Assembly: GCF_000150275.1 (NCBI RefSeq)
Contig: NW_002061016.1
Span: forward strand, 1 to 32,380
Direction: 5' to 3'
Source: Trichoplax adhaerens
Taxonomy: Eukaryota; Animalia; Placozoa
DNA: 32,380 bases
Every line of letters begins with the position of its first letter. Position 1 is the stretch's first letter. Position numbers and translations under genes: made by a program. Shown here in pieces: positions 1,459 to 32,380 of the stretch. The notes under the pieces were generated by a model. That model saw only the letters and a program-made list of their open reading frames with translations, was not told the DNA's origin and did not search any database.

Positions 1459-2475
1459 ATGGCATCAATATTTAATAGCAATTATGTCGCCGTAGGCATA
1501 GCTTGGACATTCGGCATAATTGGGACGCTAGCTAATATCGTTGCGCTTATTACAGCGAAAGCTCAAATCCAAAGATTGAAAGCCGTATCTACAATTTCAT
1601 CCCCTATAGTATATAGCATACGCAATCCTATAAAGCATCAAGCTTTTCTGATTTTTATGATTAATTTGGCGATTTCTGATTTGTTTGGCTCATTATATTT
1701 ATTGCTTATGGGAAGCTCCGATCTCTATTCTAGATTAGATAACCTAGAAGTTGCTAATGCCTCAAATTCTATTTCCAATTCCACTCCTGTTGACATCGCT
1801 TGGCCATATCATCCAACTTGCTACATGGCAAGGTCTTTGCTGATTCTTTCCATAAGCGAATCAACCACTTTAACAGTATTAATTGCAACCGAAAGATACA
1901 TGCTAGTTATGTGGCCCTTTTCTAATCACAATCATATTACTCCTAAGAGAGCAGTGATTCAATCTGTAATTTCCTGGAATACCAGCATAGTATTAGCTAT
2001 AACTTGCAATATTATAGCGGCCAAAACTCTGTTACCTCCTCCCAGTAGGTACACTTATCGCTATCATAACTTGTGCTACATCGATGATATCAATAATTCC
2101 TCGGTTCGATTATTCTTCTTATCCATGATAGTCCTTGGCTTAATATCCCATGTAATAATTATATGCACATATATTATTATTGCGTGCAAATTTCATTACG
2201 GCCCCAATAGGAGACTTAAAACAATTTATCATTCACGAGCTAAGTTACCAAAAAAAGCTGTATTTCTAGCATATACTATCGGATTTGTCAATTTTATTGC
2301 TTGGTTCCCAGCCTTCGCGGTGGGATTAATTATATTTTGTAATTATCAATTTCTAGTGGATAATATACTTTTTCAAGACGTTATTGCCATAATATATTTG
2401 CTTCTTCAAGCTAAATGCAGTATTAATCCAATTATTTTTATAATATCTTCACGTAAAAAATTCTCTATTTGCTAA
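1459..2475 (+). CDS. Intact single-exon class A GPCR, LGR/RXFP (glycoprotein-hormone/relaxin receptor)-like 7TM without LRR ectodomain, 338 aa
   Basis: Seven hydrophobic segments with INLAISDL (TM2), C..AR..LIATERY (TM3), W in TM4, NFIAWFP (TM6) and CSINPIIF (TM7). An in-frame TAA lies immediately before the ATG. Confidence 0.93.
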   Translation: MASIFNSNYVAVGIAWTFGIIGTLANIVALITAKAQIQRLKAVSTISSPIVYSIRNPIKHQAFLIFMINLAISDLFGSLYLLLMGSSDLYSRLDNLEVANASNSISNSTPVDIAWPYHPTCYMARSLLILSISESTTLTVLIATERYMLVMWPFSNHNHITPKRAVIQSVISWNTSIVLAITCNIIAAKTLLPPPSRYTYRYHNLCYIDDINNSSVRLFFLSMIVLGLISHVIIICTYIIIACKFHYGPNRRLKTIYHSRAKLPKKAVFLAYTIGFVNFIAWFPAFAVGLIIFCNYQFLVDNILFQDVIAIIYLLLQAKCSINPIIFIISSRKKFSIC

Positions 2476-10342: not shown

Positions 10343-11388
10343 ATGTCGTCAATCTTGTTCGATAATTATCTGATTATTATCATATTATGGGTAGCCGGGA
10401 TAGCTGGAATCGTTGGAAATTCTTACGTTCTCTATAGTGTGTTTTCTTTTCGGAAAATCGGTAATACAGTTAACACGAAATTGTCAATCCGTCGTCCTCA
10501 AGGGAGAGCGTTAAATCGTGCACGAGGAAGAACGTTTGTAATATTAATCTTTAACCTGGCAATAGGTGATTTACTGGGTTCTGGCCATCTAATAATCGTA
10601 GCGATATCAGATATTCGCTATCGATTTGTCAAGATCACACTATCAAATATTAGCAATCCTCTGCCTGTTCTAGAATATTCAAGGTGGTTAGATGATCCAG
10701 CTTGTTATTTAGCAAGATTCCTTCACATTACATCTATTACTATATCAATATGTTTAATGGGTTTAATTGCCATTGATCGATTTTTTCGCATTGTATTTCC
10801 ATTTTCTACGAATTTACGAATAACATCAAAATATGCGATAATATCTGTTCTAATTTCTTGGTTGGCATCTATGGTACTCGCTATATTAGGGGATTATTTT
10901 GCATATTTGTCTCGTACAATCGGTTTAAATATAATTCAACTATATCAAATTCGTAATTTATGCACCATTGATATTGCCTTCAACAACAGCGAGAAAGTAT
11001 ACTTATCGACAATGATCATGACTGGTTCTATAATCTATATTATGGCCATATGTATGTATAGCATGATTACAGTAAAAATCAAACAAATAAGTGCAGCCAG
11101 TGATATAAACAAAGCTACTTTAATCGATCATAAATTGGAAAAAGAGTTTTAACTACGGCAATTGTGATCGCAATAACAAATTTTATCACTTGGTTCCCTG
11201 CATTTATTGCAGGACTTATTTCAGTCTTTAATTACACTAACATATTTGGTAAGAGCAACTTTATCATAATTTCTGCCATATTTAACGTTATATTTCAGGC
11301 AAATTGCAGTATTAATCCAATTATATTTGTAATGTCTACTCGTAAGAAACAAATATCCATTCTTAAAGTCAGATCTAGCGTTCGTTAA
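10343..11388 (+). pseudogene. LGR-like GPCR paralog split by a single 1-bp frameshift (348 aa if restored); could be an intact gene with a sequencing error
   Basis: ORFs 10343-11152 (TM1-5) and 11164-11388 (TM6-7) join if one A is added to the A5 run at 11139-11143, giving ...HKLEKRVLTTAIVIAITNFITWFP. This matches the paralog's AEGKVLIIAIVIVITNF. Confidence 0.88.
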
Positions 11389-13928: not shown

Positions 13929-14957
13929 ATGGTATCGATCTTATTCGATAGTTATCCAAATATTATCTTATCCTAGGTTTTTGGACTGACTAGAGTCGAT
14001 GGAAACTGCTATGTTCTTCACAGTACCTTCTCTTTTCTGAAATTAGGGAACTTTAGCAGTGCAAATATATACTCTTATCGTTCTCAAAGACCATTGCTAA
14101 ATCCTATGCAAGGAAAAACTTTCGTAATATTTATCTTCAATCAAGCGATAAACGATTTACTGAGTTCATGTTATTTATTTATTTTGGCAGGATCAGATAT
14201 TCACTATCGCTTCGATACTGCAACACCATCAAATACGTCAACTTCAAATATTAGCTTTGCTGTACCAATTTAAATATTTTCGAAATGGCTAGATGATTCA
14301 GCTTGCTATTTTGCAAGATTTCTTCATATCACATCTATTACTCAGTCAATCACCATAACAGGATTGATTGCAATTGATAGACTTTTCCGCATTAAGTATC
14401 CATTTTCTAACACTTTACGTTTAACAACAAAGTATTCTATAATACTTGTTATAATTTTTTGGTTGATGGCTATTGTTACTCCTGTATTAGGCAATTATTT
14501 CGCATATTTATCGCGTCCTTTAAATTTAAATTATTTGAAACTTTATTTATATCGTAATTTATGCGCTATCGAAACAGTTGATGAAGTTCCAGAGAAAATA
14601 TACTTGTTGATAATGATAGTCCTGAATTTAATAAATTACACGGCAGCTATTAGTATGTACAACATGATTGCAGCTAAAATCAGACAAACTAACAATGATA
14701 GTACGATCAAAAACAATTTAACACATCATTAAGCGGAAGGAAAAGTTTTAATAATAGCAATTGTAATTGTAATTACAAACTTTATTTCTTGGTTTCTTGC
14801 ATTTATTGGAGGAATCATAACCGTTATTAATAGCCATTTCGTAATTAGTGATGATTATTTTATATTAATTTCTTCCATGTGTACAATTTTTATTCAAGCA
14901 AACGGCAGCATTAATCCGGTTATATTTATTTACGCACTACGCGTAAAAATGGGATGA
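13929..14957 (+). pseudogene. LGR-like GPCR pseudogene, closest paralog of 10343-11388
   Basis: One continuous frame MVSILFDSYPNIILS*VFG...IFNQAINDLL...LIAIDRLF...TNFISWFLAF...QANGSINPVIF with in-frame stops at 13974, 14271 and 14730. Conserved residues are also lost (NLA>NQA, WFP>WFL). Confidence 0.92.
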
Positions 14958-15111
14958 AAATTCCTATTAATAGACCATTTTCGAAATTCGTTTTAAAAAG
15001 AAAGCATTTGATACTGATTTAGCAGTTTAGATAGAATACGCCTTCGCATTGCAAATTCTGTTTAATACGCTTATAGTATTTTTATGTGTAAAAGCGCCTT
15101 TCCAATATTCA

Positions 15112-15224
15112 CTAGTACAAACTCCCGTCACTTTGCTGACAGTTTACGATAATGTGCTCATTTAGCAAATAGTATTATCATTTGATAGACCTGTCAGAGG
15201 TTCAGTAACTTTATACCGTGTACT
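15112..15224 (-). mobile_element. Short Helitron-like element, inverted copy of 9412-9535
   Basis: The reverse complement reads agtacacggtataaagttactgaacctctgacaggtcta...taaatgagcacattatcgtaaactgtcagcaaagtgacgggagtttgtaCTAG|t. Confidence 0.6.
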
Positions 15225-15290
15225 ACAAGATAATGTGATTTAATACTGTAATTTAATCGTATTATTATCACAAAAAAATCTATTATATGT

Positions 15291-15845
15291 TGTCACGTTA
15301 CCTTTTTGCCGTGATGAGTTAGAAGTGTTATGGTGTTTGTTAGTAAGGTGTTTTGATGATCAACTGTCCTTAGTTATTTTGTATGTATTCGAATAGGAGG
15401 ATAGACTAGGGAAATATAAATATTGATGCTGTGCAACCTTTGTGTTAGAGAGTTGTTTATGCTGACACGATTTGTAGTCGTGTTGTAAGATTATTACTGG
15501 ATAGGAGGTTATGGTTGTGAGATCTCCTACGTGAGATTAATGTAAATAGTAAATATCTTAGAAAGTATATAAAGGCTAACTATGCTGTAATGTGGACGAG
15601 GAGAAAGGCATAGAAAAGAATAAACTGTAGTGATAGTTATCTGTTCAAAAGCCTAGAATTAGCTACTTGTGTAATCGAGTAACCTAGTGACGGTCAAAGA
15701 AGTGTAGTCCCACACCCGAGAAGTTAGTGTTCTAATAGGAAGCGTAGTTCCAGTAGCACTTGTTCAGTGTCGTGATTGTACCGTACTTAGCTAAGCTTTA
15801 CACGATAAGTAAAGATCCTGTGTCACAGAAAACGTGGTTGTGACA
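15291..15845 (+). mobile_element. Solo-LTR-like element (555 bp)
   Basis: Perfect 6-bp terminal inverted repeats TGTCAC...GTGACA, TSD TATGT/CATGT, internal TATAAA near 15568 and AATAAA near 15619. Confidence 0.78.
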
Positions 15846-15862
15846 CATGTACCGTACTAAAG

Positions 15863-16495
15863 TGTTGCAGTGTTATACACTGTAATATTCAGATTATAGT
15901 AGAAACATCTATGTTAGGATAATTTTGTTGATTTACCCTTATATGTAGAGTTTCTAATTTAGATATGTGATATTTAAATATAGCATTAGCTTTTATGGTG
16001 ATATATACAGCCTACTGAAATTAGTAGCTTAATTAGGGAATCGAGAATAATCTTCTTACAATTCAAATCACTGTGATTGTAACTTACTTACGGTAGATTG
16101 TAGATAATCGTAGAAATGTTCCGTGATAGGACATATTGTAATCTGACAATTTTGTACTGGTCATTCGATGTCTATGCTCGCAAATACTGTTGTCTTCATT
16201 AGGTAGCAGTAGATAAAATTAACTTTGATGCTTTATCAGGTTTCAACATTAACATTACTAACTAGGATGTTTTTGCTATTGTTAAAGAGTATATAAATGC
16301 GATAAATCGTATATTAAAGTTAGTTCTTGTGATTAGTATTTAAGGTAAGATAAGAGGCGTCTAAGTCTTTTTGTAGTCTACTAGTTTAGGAAAAGTGTTC
16401 CTGAAAGAGTAGATATTGCTCTCTGATACGTGGCTTAAGGAATCGACTGATTGATCGTGCATTACGTTATCTTGTTGCAAAGATGTTTTGTAACA
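15863..16495 (+). mobile_element. Solo-LTR-like element (633 bp)
   Basis: TGTTGCA...TGTAACA ends, TSD TAAAG/TATAG. Confidence 0.5.
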
Positions 16496-18340
16496 TATAG
16501 TTGAAGTTAGATTTATATAATTCATAATCTCTTAATCCAACGGTTTACCTGTCACAAATATCATGAAATTTAGATAAGCTACAATATGATGAATGGTAGT
16601 AATAAACTCAATTGGTATTACCATTATCTCTTACTCATCTGAATTTTAAGATTTCTTATTAAGACGATTTATCAATATACGAAAAGTTTTATAGTAAATT
16701 ATCATACATTATTGTAACTACTCGATGTCTGCAATTACAGGATATTTAAAACTATATAATATTATTTTAATTAAGCTATTATTATATGAAAATATACTCG
16801 CGCAATCGCATTTGTAAACCCTCATTAGGTAAAAAGACCGCCAATAAATGTTCTGTTTAACGTACGATACCCAAAGGATATCATTTCGTACTAATAATAT
16901 TACCAATAATAGAGCAAGCTTGGCATCACATTGTGCTCAATCACTATTGTTCTAGTAAGTGTGTTAGTCAATTCGTGTTTAGAAAATGACTGTGATATTA
17001 ACTCCTGATTTATATTACTATAGTAAGCCTTCATATTTAAGTACAGACTTACGCCTTAATTTCAAGCATTTAACATTATACAATATTAATCATGAAGCTT
17101 GACTCTCCAACTAATTGCATACAATTTAAATGATGCAGCAGAGAATGTAAATATATTATTTCTTATTATTACAAGATATGTTTATCATTTCAGTTTTCAA
17201 TATTGCATTAATAAACTATTAGCAGTAATAATAATTTACGAAATTAAGATTAATTGCAAAATTATTAATACGCATGCTGTAGAAGTATCCTATTTAACTT
17301 GAAAGCTTATAGAATGATATCAAAATTTGATTATCCTCCATTTTCCCATACATTTACTTTCTCCCATCATATCCAATAATTACTTCCAAAATAGTATTGA
17401 CAACTTAATTCCAATATACAAAAGATACTTTAAAACCAACGTAGATCAGAAACTGTCAGAAGGAAAATATTGCTATGAATCATTCTTAGGAGTCTTTATG
17501 CGGCTACGACTATCTAAAATTAATGTCAACAAGGGAGAATAACAGATACGAGCTTATTTCTAAATTCAATTTTCTCGTAATGCCAAATAGTGCACCTTAT
17601 CATTATAAATACAATAAAAATTGAGCTGTAACTAACTTGTTTAACTATATCTTACTATCTCTTCATGAATACTATGCTGCTATAATTGCTGCGATACGCT
17701 ATATATATTAAAAAATTTTTAGTTTAAAAATCTTGGTACCAATGTTAACAAATAGAATTTTAACTGATAGCCGCTTTCTGTAATAAGAAATCTTAAGTAT
17801 ATACTAATAAACATCAAGGGAAATCACCGATAATCGACATGAAAATAACTGATAATTGTCAATTCTGTCCATTTACTTGCGAGAGCAATTTAATTGTTTG
17901 CAGGAGTAATAAAGCATCTAATTTATGTTAAAAAAATGAAGCCTCTGCATTTTAGGAAAACAATTCACTGTATTACATAGAATCACGTCTTCTACCAAGG
18001 ACTGTATTAACTAATCAACTATTCTAACATACTTCGCATCCTTCTTTGGTATTACAACACCTAAACAAGATATTTCTAAGTAAAGCTACAATATCTACTG
18101 TAGCTAGTTAGCCTTATTTAGCTAATTTACCTTGATTAGAATCTTATCACTCTACAATTTCACAATCCATCGTTTTCTACTCACAATTTTCACAATCTAT
18201 TTAGCTATATTTGGGATACGCTACAACTGGCTTCAAACTTCAGAACGGAGTGCATTGTTTCTGATATTAGCACGGTAGTCTTTATTCCATTGATAGCGTT
18301 ACCACAAATTTAGAGAAAATGTACTTTTCAGTAATGGATA

Positions 18341-21507: not shown

Positions 21508-23790
21508 AATAACTTAATTAGGCTCGTAGATCTTTATTAAGGAGTAATTGAGTTATTTCTTGATTATTGTGCCGACTATCTGGGTTCTAAGAGATAATTT
21601 AGGGAAGTCCTTTCGAAGAATTACGACAATGACATCAATAAAAATCATATGAACAATATGCTACCATAGACAATTAAAACGCAGTTGGGTAGCTATCCTA
21701 TTCATAGTAAGGTACTTATAGATTCTATTTATTTTGCAACTTTTCAATTTATTGCTATATAGCCATAAATTATCAATACTTGAAGCGATTAAAGTAGAAA
21801 GAATCGATGATCACTGTTGAGACTGTCACTGTGTTGAATTATATGCTGTAAGCTGTTCAACTGTAGGTTCCTATTTCGAAATTGAATCTCGAGACAGCCT
21901 ATCAATGAAGTCTTGCGATAAAGTCTTACGCTCAATATGAATAATGCTTATCACTACTATTAGACGTAGTTTCCAATCTATTGTATTAAGTCTGCTACCA
22001 TTTTTAAATACTGCAGCGAAATAAAAGAATTTTCAATGATGTAGAAAACAAGAGGAATATATACCATTGAAATCGATTTCTTAAGAGCTATCTTGCAGAT
22101 CGTGATTTTAGTGTTTTATTATATACGGTATGCTATTGCATCTTTCTAGACTTTATGCTGACGCACTTAAAACTTTAAGAGAAAAAACTTAGCTCTTATT
22201 ATTGCTTTAATCCTAATCAAGCCACAATCCATAGCTGTTACATATCTTAAACTAACTGTATAGTGGAACAGAAAGTGATATTTAAACTTAAACATCATGT
22301 TTAGAAAGCGATTTTTATACTGAAATAATAATTATTCCTTGTAGACTATACTCGTACATATACATGTAGTTTCTGCTAGAGGGCAATTACCTCAATATTA
22401 CCATGCTTATTGATTTTCTTGACTTGCTATCTTTCTTAATTTATAACGACATTATCTTTACTTGTTGCTGCTTTACGTTATTGAACCAAAAAAACTTCTT
22501 AAATTAGTCTTTCATCTTCGTTGGACAAAAGAAAAACACCCACTATTATTTTCTTTTAAAGGTCCGTCAATTTTTTATATAAGTAAAAATAATAAAACGA
22601 ATATGTTCCGCAAAAAAGGCTTCTTAGTTGCTATTTCGAAGACTATACAGCCTGTTGTACCAACTAAAAGAATTAATACAGGTCACTATTTCTATGTAGA
22701 CCATAGTAAATGAAATCATTGTTTAGAATTGATTTTAAAGGAAATAATGTTTCGTAGTTTATGCGGATTGTAGCTCAATGACAAAGCAATAGTAATAATA
22801 AAGGTCAACGGCCTATAAAACTGATATAATGGTTTCAGTGCCGAATGGCATGAGTGAGAATTGCCATTTTAATTTTACTTCTAATCAATCTTGGTATGCT
22901 TAATGATAGTTTTATTGCATTACATCTACGTACTTTTAGTATCAATTCAAAATCGATACTTTCAGTTTATATATATATCGTCGAAGATAATTTTTTACCT
23001 GTGGATATCTCATAAAAACGGTGAAAATTTTTTTGAGGTGTTGTCCGACTTGCAATCTTTACCATCATTTTTAAAGGTATACTCAAATTAAGTAAAAACA
23101 TTCATAAAATGACTATTATGAGTCGAAATTTGAGCTTTGAGAGTCTCAAGAAGTGTAGTTTGTGGTTTATGAGAAAAGCTAACGTTGCAAAATAAAAGTT
23201 TCAATAAATCAAAATTTAAAGAAACCAAAGGGGGCAAATATTATTTTGTTTTACGGCATTGATGTAGACTTTATTTATTTGGACCCTACCACGATTTGAC
23301 TACAAAGGACATAGAATGTAATAGGAGTTCATGAATGTTATTCTACCCGGTGGTCTCACGCCTTGTAAGATATCCTGAAAAGTTCTTATCCCTATAATAT
23401 GAGGTATTTATGTACTCATATATATATATTTGTATCTTTTTATTTTTTTATTGATCTACTCGAACAATGGGAGGCGAGCTATTCTGAAGTTTCACAAGAG
23501 AAATAGGTCATGCATGAAGTTATCTTTTGCTAATCCATGAACTTGTCTAGAATAGCAATGACTGGATAGTTGATTTGATCAATTATTTCTCCTAATTTGC
23601 GAAAAGCTTTCACTTATGTTTGGATAATGCTTGCCTAAATTCTCAACTTATAAGCAGATATTTAATGCAATATGAATGAAAGTAAACTTCTTCGCATTTT
23701 CTATACTATTGATTGTAAACAGCGTCGAGCTGAAAAGCACTTCCGGGCCGTAGTCGCTTTCTTCACAGTATTTTTGCAAAGAGTAAAACT

Positions 23791-23982
23791 ACCAGTAGTA
23801 TATCTGCTCTCTTTGTTGTGTAAAGTACTATATTTTAAAATTTGGTAATTATCTGTCTCCAAATTAAGCAACAGTTGGTTATATCGACCAGTAGTATATC
23901 TGCTCTCTTTGTTGTGTAAAGTACTGTATTTTAAAATTTGGTAATTACCTGTCCCCAAATTAAGCAACAGCTAGCTATATCG
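23791..23982. repeat. 96-bp tandem duplication (2 copies, 6 differences)
   Basis: Units 23791-23886 and 23887-23982. This explains the internal repeat of ORF 23701-23967. Confidence 0.95.
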
Positions 23983-24520
23983 GAGTTAAAGACCCCCCCT
24001 GATCTTTGGAAGAAATTTTATTAAATAAGCTTTGGTCAAGCATAGATCCTTAGAGAGCTCACGGCTTCGGAGTTCCTAAATACACGTATACTGTCCTATC
24101 GATGAATACAACAATTATAAGAAAGGATCCTGGACAATTGCCACGAATAGAATAACTTGGATCCTGGTTTGTACGTAAACAGCAATGCTATGACGATTAT
24201 AATTCGACAACATTCATTTGATGGCTAGGACATATCGAGGAGATGCTTTTGTTATTGATCGCTATTGTGAATTTAAAGCAATCAAACTAAAGGAGAAAGT
24301 TTCGTTTAGAACAGATAATAATAATATAAGCTAAAAGACTGTAATTATTTTAAGGATTCAGGTAAGCAATACAGTTAGCTTTAAAAGAAAGACAATAAAG
24401 AGAGAGCGGTATAAGCCAACTTCAAAGAATCGAACACCTATAAATTATCAGATACATACCGAAATGTTTACTAATTGCTTCAGTGAAAGATCATTAGCAA
24501 TTGACCGAAAGTTTGCATTA

Positions 24521-27500
24521 ATGGCTATAAAAAATACACTGATGATCACTATAAATTTATTCGTTCTCTCAGTTTTGGTAAGTGAAATATTTAGCTATTA
24601 TAGTTTTTAATAATTTAATCTATCGTAAGAAATTTATTTAAAGTATTGCACTTTGAACGTAAGTAGGACAGTTATTTTTAGACTAATGGCATAAATTGCA
24701 TCATCTCTTTTTTTCTGTAGTGATATTTCACGTATAAATAGGAATGAAGTTTATGTCATGTTTAAAACAGAATTATCTGTAATAGATGTAGCAGTAAAAT
24801 TTCCCACTGCCATAAAAGTTACAATAAATTTAATATACTCTGCAGGACTAACAGTTATCTATCTTTAGTCATAATATTACTCTTAACAGTTTCCTTCAAC
24901 AAATGATGACAGAAAATACTTTTCGATTATTTGTTTTAACTTAACACCTTGATTGCACCATAATTAAAGATACTGAAAAGGCAAGCGTTTGCCAAATATT
25001 ACTCAACCACTATAATCATTGCTAAAATGAAAATCACGATAGAGTGCTTTGCATCTTTTTCATTAGGCGTTAATTATCGTCAACAATCAAAAGTCTATGC
25101 CTGGTGGAACCATCATGATCAATTTAGAATGTTTTACTAATGTCGATGATAAAGATAACTCTGGAAATTACTGTGATAATAACATAGCCGATCCTTGCGA
25201 GTATGAATTCCAGATAACATTAGGAACCTTTACTAATAGTACCAAATATTGGAAATTTCGATCCAAAACACTAGCCTATTTTTCCCCACTTGATTTCCAT
25301 CCTGATCAACAATTAAGTGATGATGGGTTAATCAAGACACCCGTAGCGATACCATTTTCCGGCCCTTGGCTTGTAAGTGATCTAAAAATAATTGTAACTA
25401 GTTTCATATGAATAGCTTAGCAATTGTGACGAATCATAATAAGGCTTAGAATAAGATTTGGAGAATAGCCTGTTATTATAATTGATCTTGACCGCACTCT
25501 ATCTCCACCTTGCCAAGCATAGATATTACTACTTGTATTGAATTAGCAATATTTTTAAAGCGGCAGAGCCCAATAGCGTACCATTCCAGTTTGCTATGTA
25601 AGGTGTATTATCTTCACCCTAAATTAATACATCAAACGGGATAGAAACTCTTTTTCTCATGAGGACTAAATAGAAATCAATAAGTTATCTTTCACTCTTT
25701 TTATCTTACATAAAAACAAGATCGTAACAATAGTCGTCAGTCATTGTTAAGACAATATATTATGTTACCAATTCACACGCCATCGAATATAGCAATTTTT
25801 GTTTATATAACGATAGTATCGACACGATTCCTCAGTATAATTAAGAGCTTTGATGATGAGAATGTCAGAGTAGACTGCCAGCCAACCCATGTAGATCAAT
25901 CGATGGATAAATCTAATTAAGATAAAGGCACTCCTTCGGCTTTTAATTAGAGCTTAAACTATGAAAATTTGAAATACCATTACAACTGTGGATAAAGAAT
26001 GTTTAGAATCATTGTATCCAAATATTATTCCGTGGAGTACGTTTCGAGATGCTTGCAATCCCTTTCTATCTGTAAAGAATAAAGTTGTTAAATATAGGAT
26101 TCATCAATAGAATCGGTGATAAATAGTCAGGGAAATAACTCTTTGAAATTGCAATCAACAATTAAATTAAATTTGAAGAGAAAACGGAGTTTCGGACAAG
26201 AAAAAGGTAGCACGGCCAATATCATAACTCCTAAACTAGTTAAAGTGGTATTCACGATTATAAACTTGCGCACGCCAGATCAAAATCCCATGAAGAATAT
26301 TTTTAATCGTAGCAACATACGAGTACTATATAATCTTAGCAGAAGAAACCAATGTAAAGAAGTGATATTAAGATGTTTTTAAAATTCTACCTATATAAAT
26401 CATTTCAAATTTATTATGCTAATACTACGACATAATATTAATCTATAAGGGGTACTTAAAGGTCCGAGTTGAGGTATATGACCGTGATGGGACTGGTCCA
26501 GACTATTCTTATACCGTCATTGACAAATTCGAAGAAATAATCGTCATCGATGAAGGTTCCACGCAAGTTACTGAACTTTTGGGACAACGTCATAATCCAG
26601 CAAGCCTAGTTGTTACCTTTAAGATAACCTGTTTGAATCTTGACTATGGAGCTGTATCTTTCGACGGTAAGGCATCTATAATAAAGATTACTGGAACAGT
26701 ATCGGATAGCGTCTATCGAATTTTTATCTTGACAAGAACAGAATGGAACATTGAGGACCTAGCCAATTGCATATTTCTCAGTTTGTTTCTTCATCCATTT
26801 TTAGGATATCCAACAATTTCCGTACTTTTCGGTGTAATTGTATTAGGAATCTTCAGCCTGGATGTTTGTATCTTACGCTATAGGTTACTTAGGTAAATCA
26901 AACTGGTACTCCTCATACTTTAATGACTTTCATTTCATAATTATAAATTTACCTATCGTAACACAGTAGAATATCTTTAAGCTCAACAATGATATGGCCT
27001 ATCTCGAAAACTATGCAGCCAAATAGGAACATAGGTAGTTAAGAAAATTCTACTTCAGGTCACAGAGTATCTATTAAATTTATTGTCTATTTAATTTTAT
27101 CTTCGCAGTAAAGCAACTTATGGAGTTATATATCTGATGCAGCTAGATTTCAGTTTCGTAAAACGCTATAATTCTATATTCGAATATCAGGTTTATCTAC
27201 AGATCCTAATTTCCCAAAGGCAACTGACCATAGCAATGCAGCATCTGCTGCAAGTAACTATGATTCCTTATATTTCGGTTCAAGTAATTCACTGGTATGG
27301 AATATATTTAATGGCTAATGCCTGTGATAGCTATTTTAAGTTTTCTTAAGTAGATCATTAGCATACGCACTTATCTAATTGAGAAATTTTGAGATGGATC
27401 TGTAATGCAACGAAAATGATTTTCAGAACCCTTTCGATCCGTGTAACCGTCCTTACACCAACCAGAGCATTGTTACTAGACCTAGCGAAAGTAATATAAT

Positions 27501-27663
27501 TGCTCATAATCATGACATTACTTCAATGAACAATAAGAAGAGTGCAAGCCTTCGATATAAAAATCTATTTGATGAGTATGATGATCAATCAATCACTTTC
27601 ATGAACTCTCCTCCAAGTCTAAGTGGATATGAACGCGTTGATGACCCCTATAATAGTATGTAA
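24521..27663 (+). CDS. 7-exon single-pass membrane protein (~358 aa): signal peptide, Notch-ligand N-terminal C2/MNNL domain, vestigial DSL start, TM, Tyr-rich tail
   Basis: Exons 24521-24577, 25067-25372, 26450-26666, 26805-26892, 26967-27034, 27191-27294 and 27427-27663. All introns are GT..AG with compatible phases (1077 nt, no internal stop). The motifs GTIMINLECFTN..KDNSGNYC..C...F.I.L, TPVAIPFSGPWL|GYLKVRVEVYD and SLVVTFKITC...YG parallel Delta's [42 protein letters not shown] and SLEYDFRVTC...YYG. Exons 5-6 are the least certain. Confidence 0.75.
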
Positions 27664-32086: not shown

Positions 32087-32137
32087 NNNNNNNNNNNNNN
32101 NNNNNNNNNNNNNNNNNNNNNNNNNNNNNNNNNNNNN
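32087..32137. other. Assembly gap (51 N)
   Basis: Run of N. Confidence 1.
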
Positions 32138-32380
32138 GCGATACCATTTTCCGGCCCTTGGCTTGTAAGTGATCTAAAAATAATTGTAACTAGCTTCATA
32201 TGAATAGCTTAGCAATTGTGACGAATCATAATAAGGCTTAGAATAAGATTTGGAGAATAGCATGTCATTATAATCGATCTTGACCGCACTCTATCTCCAC
32301 CTTGCCAAGCATAGATATTACTACTTGTATTGAATTAACAATATTTTTAAAGCGGCAGAGCCCAATATCGTACCATTCCA
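32138..32380 (+). repeat. Near-identical copy of 25346-25588 (end of MNNL exon 2 plus intron 2)
   Basis: 243 bp, 6 substitutions (all intronic), no indels. It starts immediately after the gap. Confidence 0.97.

What the first reader, a model, noticed from the sequence alone, without database searches (positions are those of the whole stretch)
24521..26892. Notch-ligand C2/MNNL domain attached directly to a TM helix, with no intact DSL or EGF repeats
Seen: the spliced ectodomain aligns by eye to the Delta/Jagged N-terminal C2 domain and keeps only the start of the DSL (FKITCLNLDYG versus FRVTCDLNYYG). It lacks the other DSL cysteines and splices straight into the TM exon. Phase-0 introns lie in the signal peptide and after PFSGPWL, matching recalled DLL1/JAG1 intron positions (after FxFxWP). 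Established: the ligand C2 domain binds phospholipid and, with the DSL, contacts Notch. Inference: this is a non-canonical Delta derivative, either a Notch decoy/modulator or a stand-alone lipid or cell-surface sensor.
Basis: partly seen in the sequence, partly recalled or inferred. Interest (0 to 1): 0.8.

Follow-up and report, generated by a model that had tools for sequence, protein, structure and literature searches.

The report
Stand-alone Notch-ligand C2 membrane protein
A Trichoplax gene (TRIADDRAFT_62484) encodes a small membrane protein whose only folded outer part is the C2 "tip" of Notch ligands, with no DSL or EGF parts; it is the shortest member of an apparently undescribed placozoan family, and its function is untested.

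Summary
The window is a whole Trichoplax adhaerens scaffold. The gene is the public, unnamed model TRIADDRAFT_62484 (370 aa, no Pfam domain).

- **C2 homology:** Exons 25067-25372 and 26450-26666 encode a Delta/Jagged-type C2 (MNNL) domain. Pfam misses it. A profile of seven divergent Trichoplax paralogues hits only Drosophila Delta in the PDB (E 9e-6). The AlphaFold model of the public protein matches Notch-ligand C2 domains best (Z 15.9-13.4; generic C2 domains score 12.4 or less).
- **Gene structure:** The phase-0 intron after ..PF.G.W(P/L) is shared with Trichoplax's own canonical Delta and seven paralogues.
- **What is missing:** Only the first DSL cysteine survives. No EGF exon lies within the scaffold, or within 10 kb downstream in the Trichoplax sp. 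H2 orthologue.
- **What follows:** Exon 3 splices into a TM exon, followed by a roughly 100-aa tail that the finding's coordinates omit.
- **Selection:** Exons differ less than introns between H1 and H2 (4/983 against 35/1875).

All seven paralogues examined keep a two-cysteine DSL stub plus EGF repeats, so this gene is a derived, EGF-less member. This scan had already noted the DSL-less family on other pieces of this genome. Function is inferred only: a short-reach lipid or surface sensor is likelier than a Notch decoy.

The parts
24521..24577 (+). Exon 1: start codon and signal peptide (MAIKNTLMITINLFVLSVL), followed by a phase-0 GTAAGT donor
   Evidence: Sequence. There are 0 differences in 57 nt against Trichoplax sp. 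H2, while intron 1 has 14 in 489. The upstream in-frame ATG at 24464 used by the public H1 model reads ATA in H2, so 24521 is the likelier start. Hydrophobic peak at P0001 residues ~24-46.
25067..25372 (+). Exon 2: first half of the Delta/Jagged-type C2 (MNNL) domain, 102 codons, phase 0 at both ends
   Evidence: The invariant Cys pair and the ..NP..PF..W motif are shared with the paralogues and the canonical Delta. The donor lies at the same codon as in Delta and 7 paralogues. The family profile hits Drosophila Delta 2-101 at E 9e-6.
26179..26247 (+). Doubtful in-frame cassette exon (RKRSFGQEKGSTANIITPKLVKV) present in the public H1 model; the H2 model extends it to 26322
   Evidence: P0001 and P0010. 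The acceptor is weak (aaatttgaag|A). No paralogue has an exon here, and the model of paralogue B, which NCBI labels 'expressed protein', joins the two C2 halves directly. It folds as a loop of pLDDT 61-64. There are 0 H1/H2 differences in 144 nt, P about 0.07.
26450..26666 (+). Exon 3: second half of the C2 domain plus a stub of the DSL (ITCLNLDYG; the second DSL Cys is replaced by Ser), with a phase-1 donor G|GTAAGG
   Evidence: The end-of-exon position and phase match paralogues A-G. The best PDB hit of the exon-3 profile is Jagged-2 residues 115-183, aligned end to end, at E 1.
26667..26804 (+). Intron 3: 138 nt, in frame and free of stops, so retaining it would also keep the frame
   Evidence: The chance of 46 open codons is about 0.026. 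Both public models splice it out.
26805..26892 (+). Exon 4: transmembrane helix (YPTISVLFGVIVLGIFSLDVCIL) plus the stop-transfer RYRLL; donor AG|GTAAAT (phase 2), or the in-frame TAA at 26894-26896 if unspliced
   Evidence: Kyte-Doolittle peak of 2.55 at P0001 residues ~236-264. AlphaFold helix 239-264.
26967..27294 (+). Middle of the cytoplasmic tail; the two public models disagree (H1 uses 27109-27190; H2 uses 26967-27034 plus 27191-27294)
   Evidence: All junctions are GT-AG and in frame. There are no H1/H2 differences from 26648 to 27333.
27427..27663 (+). Last exon: polar, predicted-disordered tail end (NPF, YTNQ, LRYKNL, SGYERV, YNSM motifs) and the TAA stop
   Evidence: Shared by both public models. 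0 H1/H2 differences in 234 nt. No paralogue of it in the genome. pLDDT below 50.

Best explanation
**What it is.** This is an intact Trichoplax gene (TRIADDRAFT_62484; the orthologue in Trichoplax sp. H2 is TrispH2_005455). It encodes a type I membrane protein built of four parts:
- a signal peptide;
- one Delta/Jagged-type C2 (MNNL) domain;
- about ten linker residues, which are the remnant of the first DSL loop with its second cysteine lost;
- one transmembrane helix and a disordered cytoplasmic tail of about 100 residues.

**Origin.** It arose inside a placozoan family of 'C2 head + two-cysteine DSL stub + EGF repeats' proteins by losing the whole EGF stalk.

**Shown here.** The exon structure, C2 homology and predicted fold, absence of DSL and EGF, the same architecture in H2, and exons that change less than introns.

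**Inferred mechanism.**
- With no stalk, the C2 domain sits only a few nanometres above its own membrane. It can therefore act only at very close range: on lipid or glycan surfaces of tightly apposed cells or particles, or in cis.
- The acidic V-x-D-x-D strand end is kept. It aligns with the WDWD of Jagged-2 and, from my own knowledge, corresponds to the Ca2+/lipid site of Jagged-1 C2.
- The tail carries an NPF motif (EH-domain endocytic type) and several tyrosine motifs (YxN, YxxM, [LS]xYxx[LV]). It would couple binding to endocytosis or SH2-type signalling.
- The protein is probably not a canonical activating Notch ligand.
For: - **Identity and orthologue:**
- **Paralogues:** exon 2 and exon 3 match at E 1.9e-16 to 1.4e-6.
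- **Link to MNNL:** paralogues E and G pass the Pfam MNNL cut-off at 31 and 23.6 bits. A profile of 7 divergent members, without Delta or E, hits Drosophila Delta 2-101 at E 9e-6 as the only PDB hit. The full 9-member profile hits Delta, DLL4, DLL1, JAG1, Serrate and JAG2.
- **Shared introns:** the phase-0 intron after W-P/L is shared with the canonical Trichoplax Delta and all paralogues. The phase-1 intron two residues after the second DSL Cys position is shared with A-G.
- **Fold:** in the AlphaFold model of P0001, the blocks covering residues 51-220 have pLDDT 85-96, apart from the inserted loop at 61-64. Foldseek's top 21 ranks are Notch-ligand C2 domains, E 2.5e-7 and weaker. VIA gives Z 15.9, rmsd 2.1 A over 142 residues to Drosophila Delta; the twelve ligand entries score Z 15.9-13.4 and generic C2 domains 12.4 or less.
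- **No EGF:**; also none in 10 kb downstream on the 444-kb H2 contig, whereas all of A-G and L032 have EGF exons.
- **Tree:** the exon-2 tree nests the gene with EGF-bearing L032 (87/90) inside the A/B clade.
- **Selection:** exon differences 4/983 against intron differences 35/1875, Fisher p 0.001; 1 non-synonymous and 3 synonymous changes.
- **Membrane anchor:** TM and signal hydropathy peaks.
- **Acidic motif:** alignment to Jagged-2.
Against: - No expression evidence could be reached. NCBI labels the H1 model only 'predicted protein'.
- Pfam MNNL does not hit the exons or the whole protein.
- The profile of the three closest members alone reaches only E 0.16, and the exon-3 profile only E 1.
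- The alignment used for folding included the canonical Delta exon and the MNNL-positive paralogues, which may pull the model towards the ligand C2.
- The selection signal rests on four exon changes. H1/H2 divergence varies strongly along the scaffold, and a 686-nt stretch spanning exons and introns has no change at all.
- The extra exon in both public models would put 23-48 residues into a C2 hairpin.
- The middle of the tail differs between the models.
- Lipid binding, Ca2+ binding and tail signalling are inferences from motifs. Short tyrosine motifs arise easily by chance.
Confidence: 0.6

Rival explanations
1. Notch decoy or cis-modulator. The lone C2 domain keeps enough of the ligand's Notch-contacting surface to bind Trichoplax Notch, in cis or in trans, without activating it.
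For: The domain is closest in predicted fold to ligand C2 domains, which in the DLL4 and JAG1 complexes (PDB 4XL1, 4XLW, 5UK5, all among the top hits) sit against Notch EGF12 (contact recalled from my own knowledge). Trichoplax has a Notch gene and one canonical Delta gene with a strong MNNL exon and a DSL exon (PMC2770060).
Against: From my own knowledge of those complexes, the DSL and EGF1-3 supply much of the binding interface, and they are absent here. The whole parent family (A-G) has only a two-cysteine DSL stub, so Notch binding may have been lost before this gene arose. The C2 is only 14-22% identical to ligand C2 domains in the structural alignments. PMC2770060 reports no Fringe in Trichoplax. 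No binding test was possible.
Confidence: 0.15
2. A decaying leftover. A partial duplicate of a C2-EGF gene lost its EGF exons and now reads into fortuitous open frames; the 'TM' and tail are gene-prediction artefacts in AT-rich DNA.
For: The H1 model is labelled 'predicted protein' only. The second DSL cysteine is lost. The tail has no paralogue and the two public models disagree on it. Pfam finds nothing. The scaffold is small, with an N gap and a duplicated fragment at its end.
Against: All C2 exons and splice sites are intact at only 35-40% identity to the nearest relatives, which implies long survival as a coding sequence. The locus is collinear on a 444-kb H2 contig, so this is not a mis-assembly. 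Exons change less than introns. From exon 3 to the TM end there are 157 open codons, and the last exon is an 85-codon open frame of polar composition that does not look like translated AT-rich DNA to me.
Confidence: 0.15
3. It is a C2 or other beta-sandwich domain unrelated to Notch ligands, and the resemblance to MNNL is convergent or due to chance.
For: Pfam MNNL misses it. Generic C2 domains also score Z 10-12.4.
Against: A chain of significant sequence links runs from the window gene through A/B and E/G to MNNL. Two intron positions and phases are shared with the family and one with the canonical Delta. The twelve ligand C2 entries rank above every other C2. The only PDB sequence hit is Delta, aligned end to end.
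Confidence: 0.05

Closest known systems
C2 (MNNL, PF07657) domain of Delta/Serrate/Jagged Notch ligands, e.g. Drosophila Delta 7ALK, DLL4 4XL1/5MVX, Jagged-1 4CC0, Jagged-2 5MW5
   Same: An N-terminal extracellular C2 sandwich directly after a signal peptide. The strand order is colinear (model 51-225 against Delta 23-185, Z 15.9). The conserved Cys pair and the NP..PF..W and V.D.D motifs are shared. The phase-0 intron after F.F.WP is the same as in Trichoplax Delta.
   Different: It does not pass the Pfam model. Only the first DSL cysteine is kept, and there is no DSL core or EGF repeat. The C2 sits about 10 residues from the membrane instead of at the tip of a long rod. The tail carries tyrosine and NPF motifs.
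Trichoplax DSL-less C2-EGF paralogues (A = C1409:4337k; B = C1409:4352k, TRIADDRAFT_64025; C-G), also noted elsewhere in this genome by this scan
   Same: The same two C2 exons with the same intron positions and phases, 32-40% identity to A and B, and the same truncation point of the DSL.
   Different: They keep the second DSL cysteine (a closed C-x8-C loop) and continue into EGF exons, at least 16 within the stretch fetched for A. The window gene has Ser there and goes straight to the TM.
Vertebrate DLL3 and the non-canonical ligands DLK1/DLK2 and DNER (from my own knowledge; DLL3 also per PMC12166595)
   Same: Delta-family or EGF-type surface proteins with a missing or degenerate DSL that do not activate Notch in trans and act as modulators.
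   Different: DLL3 keeps its EGF repeats. DLK and DNER lack the C2 and keep EGFs. None is a C2 domain alone on a TM helix.
Generic Ca2+/lipid-binding C2 domains (dysferlin C2A, cPLA2, extended synaptotagmin)
   Same: Same fold (Z 10-12.4); acidic residues at the strand ends near the tip.
   Different: Those domains are cytosolic. This one is extracellular, carries cysteines conserved across the family, and ranks below the ligand C2 domains in similarity to generic ones.

Membership tests
Canonical DSL Notch ligands (Delta/Serrate/Jagged) | N-terminal C2/MNNL domain | tested here: met
   The family profile hits Delta at E 9e-6. The predicted fold gives Z 15.9-13.4 to ligand C2 domains. An intron is shared with Trichoplax Delta. 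The Pfam model itself is not passed (see the PF07657 row).
Canonical DSL Notch ligands (Delta/Serrate/Jagged) | DSL domain with six cysteines and a YYG motif (PF01414) | tested here: not met
   Only ITCLNLDYG remains, with one Cys and Ser at the second Cys position. The genome-wide PF01414 scan lists nothing on this scaffold. No Pfam hit on P0001.
Canonical DSL Notch ligands (Delta/Serrate/Jagged) | EGF repeats after the DSL | tested here: not met
   No frame with an EGF-like cysteine pattern at 26.6-32 kb on the + strand. No significant tblastn hit of paralogue EGF exons. None in 10 kb downstream in H2.
Canonical DSL Notch ligands (Delta/Serrate/Jagged) | Single-pass type I membrane protein | tested here: met
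   Hydropathy peaks at residues ~24-46 and ~236-264 of P0001; helix 239-264. No dedicated signal-peptide or TM predictor was available.
Canonical DSL Notch ligands (Delta/Serrate/Jagged) | Binds and activates Notch | not testable with these tools
   Needs binding and signalling assays. No complex prediction was run because I make no binding claim.
Pfam MNNL (PF07657) | Score at or above the gathering cut-off of 22.5 bits | tested here: not met
   No hit at E <= 10 for exon 2, exon 3, P0001 or P0010. Paralogues E (31 bits) and G (23.6 bits) pass.
Placozoan DSL-less 'C2 head' family (paralogues A-G, L032) | Two C2 exons with a phase-0 intron after ..W-P/L and a phase-1 intron two residues after the second DSL Cys position | tested here: met
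Placozoan DSL-less 'C2 head' family (paralogues A-G, L032) | Closed two-cysteine DSL stub followed by an EGF stalk | tested here: not met
   The second Cys is Ser and there is no EGF. The gene is therefore a divergent, stalk-less member.

The most novel reading that the evidence does not exclude
The Notch-ligand C2 domain can work on its own as the sensing ectodomain of a receptor. In placozoans a stalk-less 'Delta head' would bind lipid or glycan surfaces at very close range and signal or internalise through an NPF and phosphotyrosine tail. That would point to a Notch-independent, possibly older, function of the ligand C2 module.
Probability: 0.2. Interest if true: 0.75.

Novelty: new variant of a known kind. 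Interest (0 to 1): 0.5.

Why it matters
- **A natural experiment on the C2 domain.** What the C2 tip of Notch ligands does, for example in membrane lipid recognition or tuning of Notch activation, is, to my knowledge, still being worked out. It has been studied only as part of the C2-DSL-EGF rod. A natural protein that presents this domain alone on a membrane anchor, kept in two Trichoplax lineages, isolates the domain's autonomous activity.
- **Ligand modules in a simple animal.** It adds the minimal member to a placozoan expansion of DSL-less 'Delta heads'. The Notch-evolution papers I read (PMC2770060, PMC12166595) do not mention this expansion; they discuss only the Delta ligand for Trichoplax. 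So the ligand modules were shuffled widely in a very simple animal.
- **Annotation.** Both public orthologues currently carry no domain annotation. They can now be labelled as divergent MNNL/C2 proteins.

Tried and rejected
- **Pfam:** scans of single exons and of the whole public proteins found nothing.
- **Word search:** the exon 3-TM read-through found nothing, because the real model is longer than the length filter allows.
- **Half-domain fold:** AlphaFold of exon 2 alone gave pLDDT 70.8, and Foldseek found no meaningful match. Half a sandwich is not informative.
- **Big protein search:** hits P0005 and P0008 are bacterial repeat proteins that matched over short stretches. I set them aside as irrelevant.
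- **Alignments:** MAFFT alignments A5, A6 and A7 misplaced fragment ends and were not used for folding. A8 was checked by eye first.
- **EGF relics:** none found in the window.
- **Tail:** the last exon has no paralogue in the genome.
- **Literature:** a search for the gene's accession numbers returned no paper.
- **Joined model:** Exons were searched one by one by reference, and whole-protein steps used the public protein P0001.
- **Human genes:** no comparison with human DLL1 or JAG1 gene structure was made.
- **Complex prediction:** none was run, as I claim no binding.
Full report
**Source and gene.**
The window is AT-rich (about 31% GC) animal DNA with GT-AG introns. It is a whole 32,380-base scaffold of a 105.6-Mb assembly. 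A search of 1.8 billion proteins with exon 2 returned a 100% match to a 370-aa public protein. That protein is TRIADDRAFT_62484 / XP_002118449.1 / UniProt B3SDY0 of Trichoplax adhaerens, labelled 'predicted protein' or 'uncharacterized protein'.

**Exon structure.**
- Exon 1 is 24521-24577 and encodes the signal peptide.
- Exon 2 is 25067-25372, phase 0 on both sides, with donor CTT|GTAAGT right after PFSGPWL.
- Exon 3 is 26450-26666 and ends FKITCLNLDYGAVSFD G|GTAAGG (phase 1).
- Exon 4 is 26805-26892 and encodes the TM helix.

Three things go beyond the finding:
1. The 138-nt intron 3 is in frame and free of stops (P about 0.026 by chance). Retaining it would also give a membrane protein. 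Both public models splice it out.
2. The TAA after the TM exon overlaps a good donor (AG|GTAAAT). Both public models continue into a cytoplasmic tail whose last exon is 27427-27663, but they disagree on the middle exons. The H1 model uses 27109-27190; the H2 model uses 26967-27034 plus 27191-27294.
3. Both public models insert an in-frame exon starting at 26179 between the two C2 exons, 23 aa in H1 and 48 aa in H2.

No paralogue has that inserted exon. The model of paralogue B, which NCBI labels 'expressed protein', joins the two halves directly. The acceptor is poor, and the insert folds as a low-confidence loop. I treat it as an unresolved cassette exon.

**Is the ectodomain a Notch-ligand C2?**
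Pfam finds nothing in single exons or in the whole public protein. The genome, however, holds a graded series of relatives:
- Exons 2 and 3 match two tandem genes on C1409. Paralogue A scores E 1.9e-16 and 6e-8; paralogue B scores 3.6e-10 and 1.4e-6. Five further loci, C to G, match more weakly.
- The Pfam MNNL model hits the canonical Delta gene on C1403 at 104.8 bits, with a 71-bit DSL exon 6 kb downstream. It also hits paralogues E and G above its cut-off.
- A profile of exon 2 from the window gene plus A and B finds a single PDB sequence at E <= 10: Drosophila Delta residues 2-101, E 0.16.
- A profile of seven divergent members, leaving out Delta and E, finds the same single hit at E 9e-6.
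- All nine members together hit Delta, DLL4, DLL1, Jagged-1, Serrate and Jagged-2.
- The exon-3 profile has Jagged-2 residues 115-183 as its best hit, aligned end to end. E is only 1.

Gene structure agrees with this:
- The phase-0 intron directly after ..W-P (W-L in this gene) sits at the same codon in the canonical Delta and in paralogues A-F. A GTA in frame suggests the same for G.
- The phase-1 intron two residues after the second DSL-cysteine position is shared with A-G.

**Fold.**
I did not build a joined model of my own. I folded the public protein P0001 with an alignment of exon-wise family fragments (A8, checked).
- The blocks covering residues 51-220 have pLDDT 85-96, apart from the inserted loop at 61-64. 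There is a helix at 239-264 and a disordered tail.
- Foldseek's first 21 ranks are Notch-ligand C2 domains, with Jagged-2 at E 2.5e-7.
- VIA gives Z 15.9, rmsd 2.1 A over 142 residues, to Drosophila Delta. The twelve ligand entries score Z 15.9-13.4, and the best non-ligand C2 scores 12.4.
- Caveat: the alignment was shallow (23 rows) and contained MNNL-positive exons.

**What is missing, and where the gene came from.**
- The + strand from 26.6 to 32 kb holds no frame with an EGF- or DSL-like cysteine pattern. EGF exons of paralogue A find nothing significant in the window.
- The orthologue in Trichoplax sp. H2 (TrispH2_005455) has identical C2 exons apart from one D-to-N change. It lies on a 444-kb contig that is collinear with the window at 98% identity.
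- No EGF-like frame occurs in the 10 kb downstream in H2. The next gene there is a GPCR. Mis-assembly is therefore excluded.
- All seven paralogues, and the closest foreign relative (Logan contig L032, 40% identity), end exon 3 with C-x8-C and then run into EGF exons.
- None has the rest of the DSL. The collapsed DSL is thus a family trait, and the window gene differs by having also lost the second cysteine and the whole EGF stalk.
- An exon-2 tree places the gene with L032 and L033 (87/90) inside the A/B clade (88/89), so the stalk-less state is derived.

This scan's earlier notes on other pieces of this genome describe the same DSL-less family (s1-751077, s1-748243, s1-747284) and other 'Delta-head' architectures (s1-748233, s1-739555). 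I confirmed the DSL stub independently for A-G and did not test the rest.

**Is it a working gene?**
- Between H1 and H2 the core exons show 4 differences in 983 nt and the clear introns 35 in 1875 (Fisher p 0.001). One change is non-synonymous and three are synonymous.
- The upstream ATG at 24464 used by the H1 model is ATA in H2.
- The numbers are small, and a 686-nt block (26648-27333) has no change at all, exons and introns alike. The selection signal is therefore suggestive, not decisive.
- Intact frames and splice sites at only 35-40% identity to the nearest relatives argue against a pseudogene.
- I could reach no expression data.

**Mechanism (inferred).**
- In canonical ligands the C2 sits at the tip of a long DSL-EGF rod. 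From my own knowledge of the Jagged-1, DLL4 and Drosophila work, it binds phospholipid and touches Notch EGF12, while the DSL touches EGF11.
- Here the C2 is about ten residues from the membrane, so it can act only at very short range or in cis.
- The acidic V-Y-D-R-D strand end is conserved across the family and aligns with the WDWD of Jagged-2. That fits a retained Ca2+/lipid site.
- The tail has NPF, YTNQ, LRYKNL, SGYERV and YNSM motifs. These suggest endocytosis and SH2 coupling, so the protein looks more like a receptor than a ligand; note s1-756301 says the same.
- I give about 0.6 to the overall reading (a real stalk-less C2 surface protein acting as a short-range sensor). The structural core of that reading is near 0.85.
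- I give 0.15 to a Notch decoy, 0.15 to a decaying or mis-predicted gene, and 0.05 to a non-ligand C2.

**Novelty.**
The Notch-evolution papers I read discuss only the Delta ligand for Trichoplax. They do not mention MNNL-only or DSL-less proteins there (PMC2770060, PMC12166595). No paper in the library cites the gene's accessions. Pfam assigns no domain to the public protein. I class it as a new variant of a known kind: a Notch-ligand C2 domain in an undescribed, minimal architecture.

Noticed in passing
window 32087-32380: After a run of N, bases 32138-32380 repeat 25348-25590 (the end of exon 2 and the start of intron 2) with a few mismatches. This copy is 100% identical to the Trichoplax sp. 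H2 allele. It is probably a second haplotype or an assembly artefact at the scaffold end.
   Followed up: partly
window 26179-26190: The doubtful cassette exon begins RKRS, which resembles a furin-type cleavage motif. If the exon is used, the motif would sit in a loop inside the C2 domain.
   Followed up: no
window 26648-27333: There is no H1/H2 difference across 686 nt spanning the end of exon 3, intron 3, the TM exon, intron 4 and the alternative tail exons. About 13 differences are expected at the intron rate (P about 3e-6). This could reflect strong constraint, for example overlapping alternative exons, or a recent exchange between lineages.
   Followed up: partly
window 1459-2475, 10343-11388, 14364-14732: A tandem series of intronless rhodopsin-type GPCR genes. 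The first is intact (7tm_1, 64.7 bits); the others appear split or truncated. The H2 locus also has a 7tm_1 gene about 10 kb downstream of the C2 gene.
   Followed up: no
window 14007-17872 versus L035 1-3431: H1/H2 identity drops to about 92% here, with a 115-bp inverted piece (15111-15225) and rearranged order. From 18.6 kb onward identity is 98-99%.
   Followed up: no
window 23701-23982: A 96-bp tandem duplication (23791-23886 and 23887-23982 cross-match in H2). It gives a minus-strand ORF with a repeated peptide.
   Followed up: no
L032 (Logan SRR30664516) and L033/L034 (SRR30664517/6): Contigs of about 30% GC from unnamed sequencing runs carry the closest foreign relatives of exon 2 (36-40% identity), with the same intron position. 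L032 continues into at least 8 EGF exons. They are probably from another placozoan; L033 ends just after exon 2, so its architecture is unknown.
   Followed up: partly
window 25128 and 26631 (Cys codons in LECF and ITCL): The ectodomain has four cysteines: the family-invariant pair, plus one in the first strand (aligned paralogues A-G lack it; L032 has a Cys two positions later) and the orphaned first DSL cysteine. The two odd ones might pair with each other or form an intermolecular bond. I could not check distances in the model.
   Followed up: no
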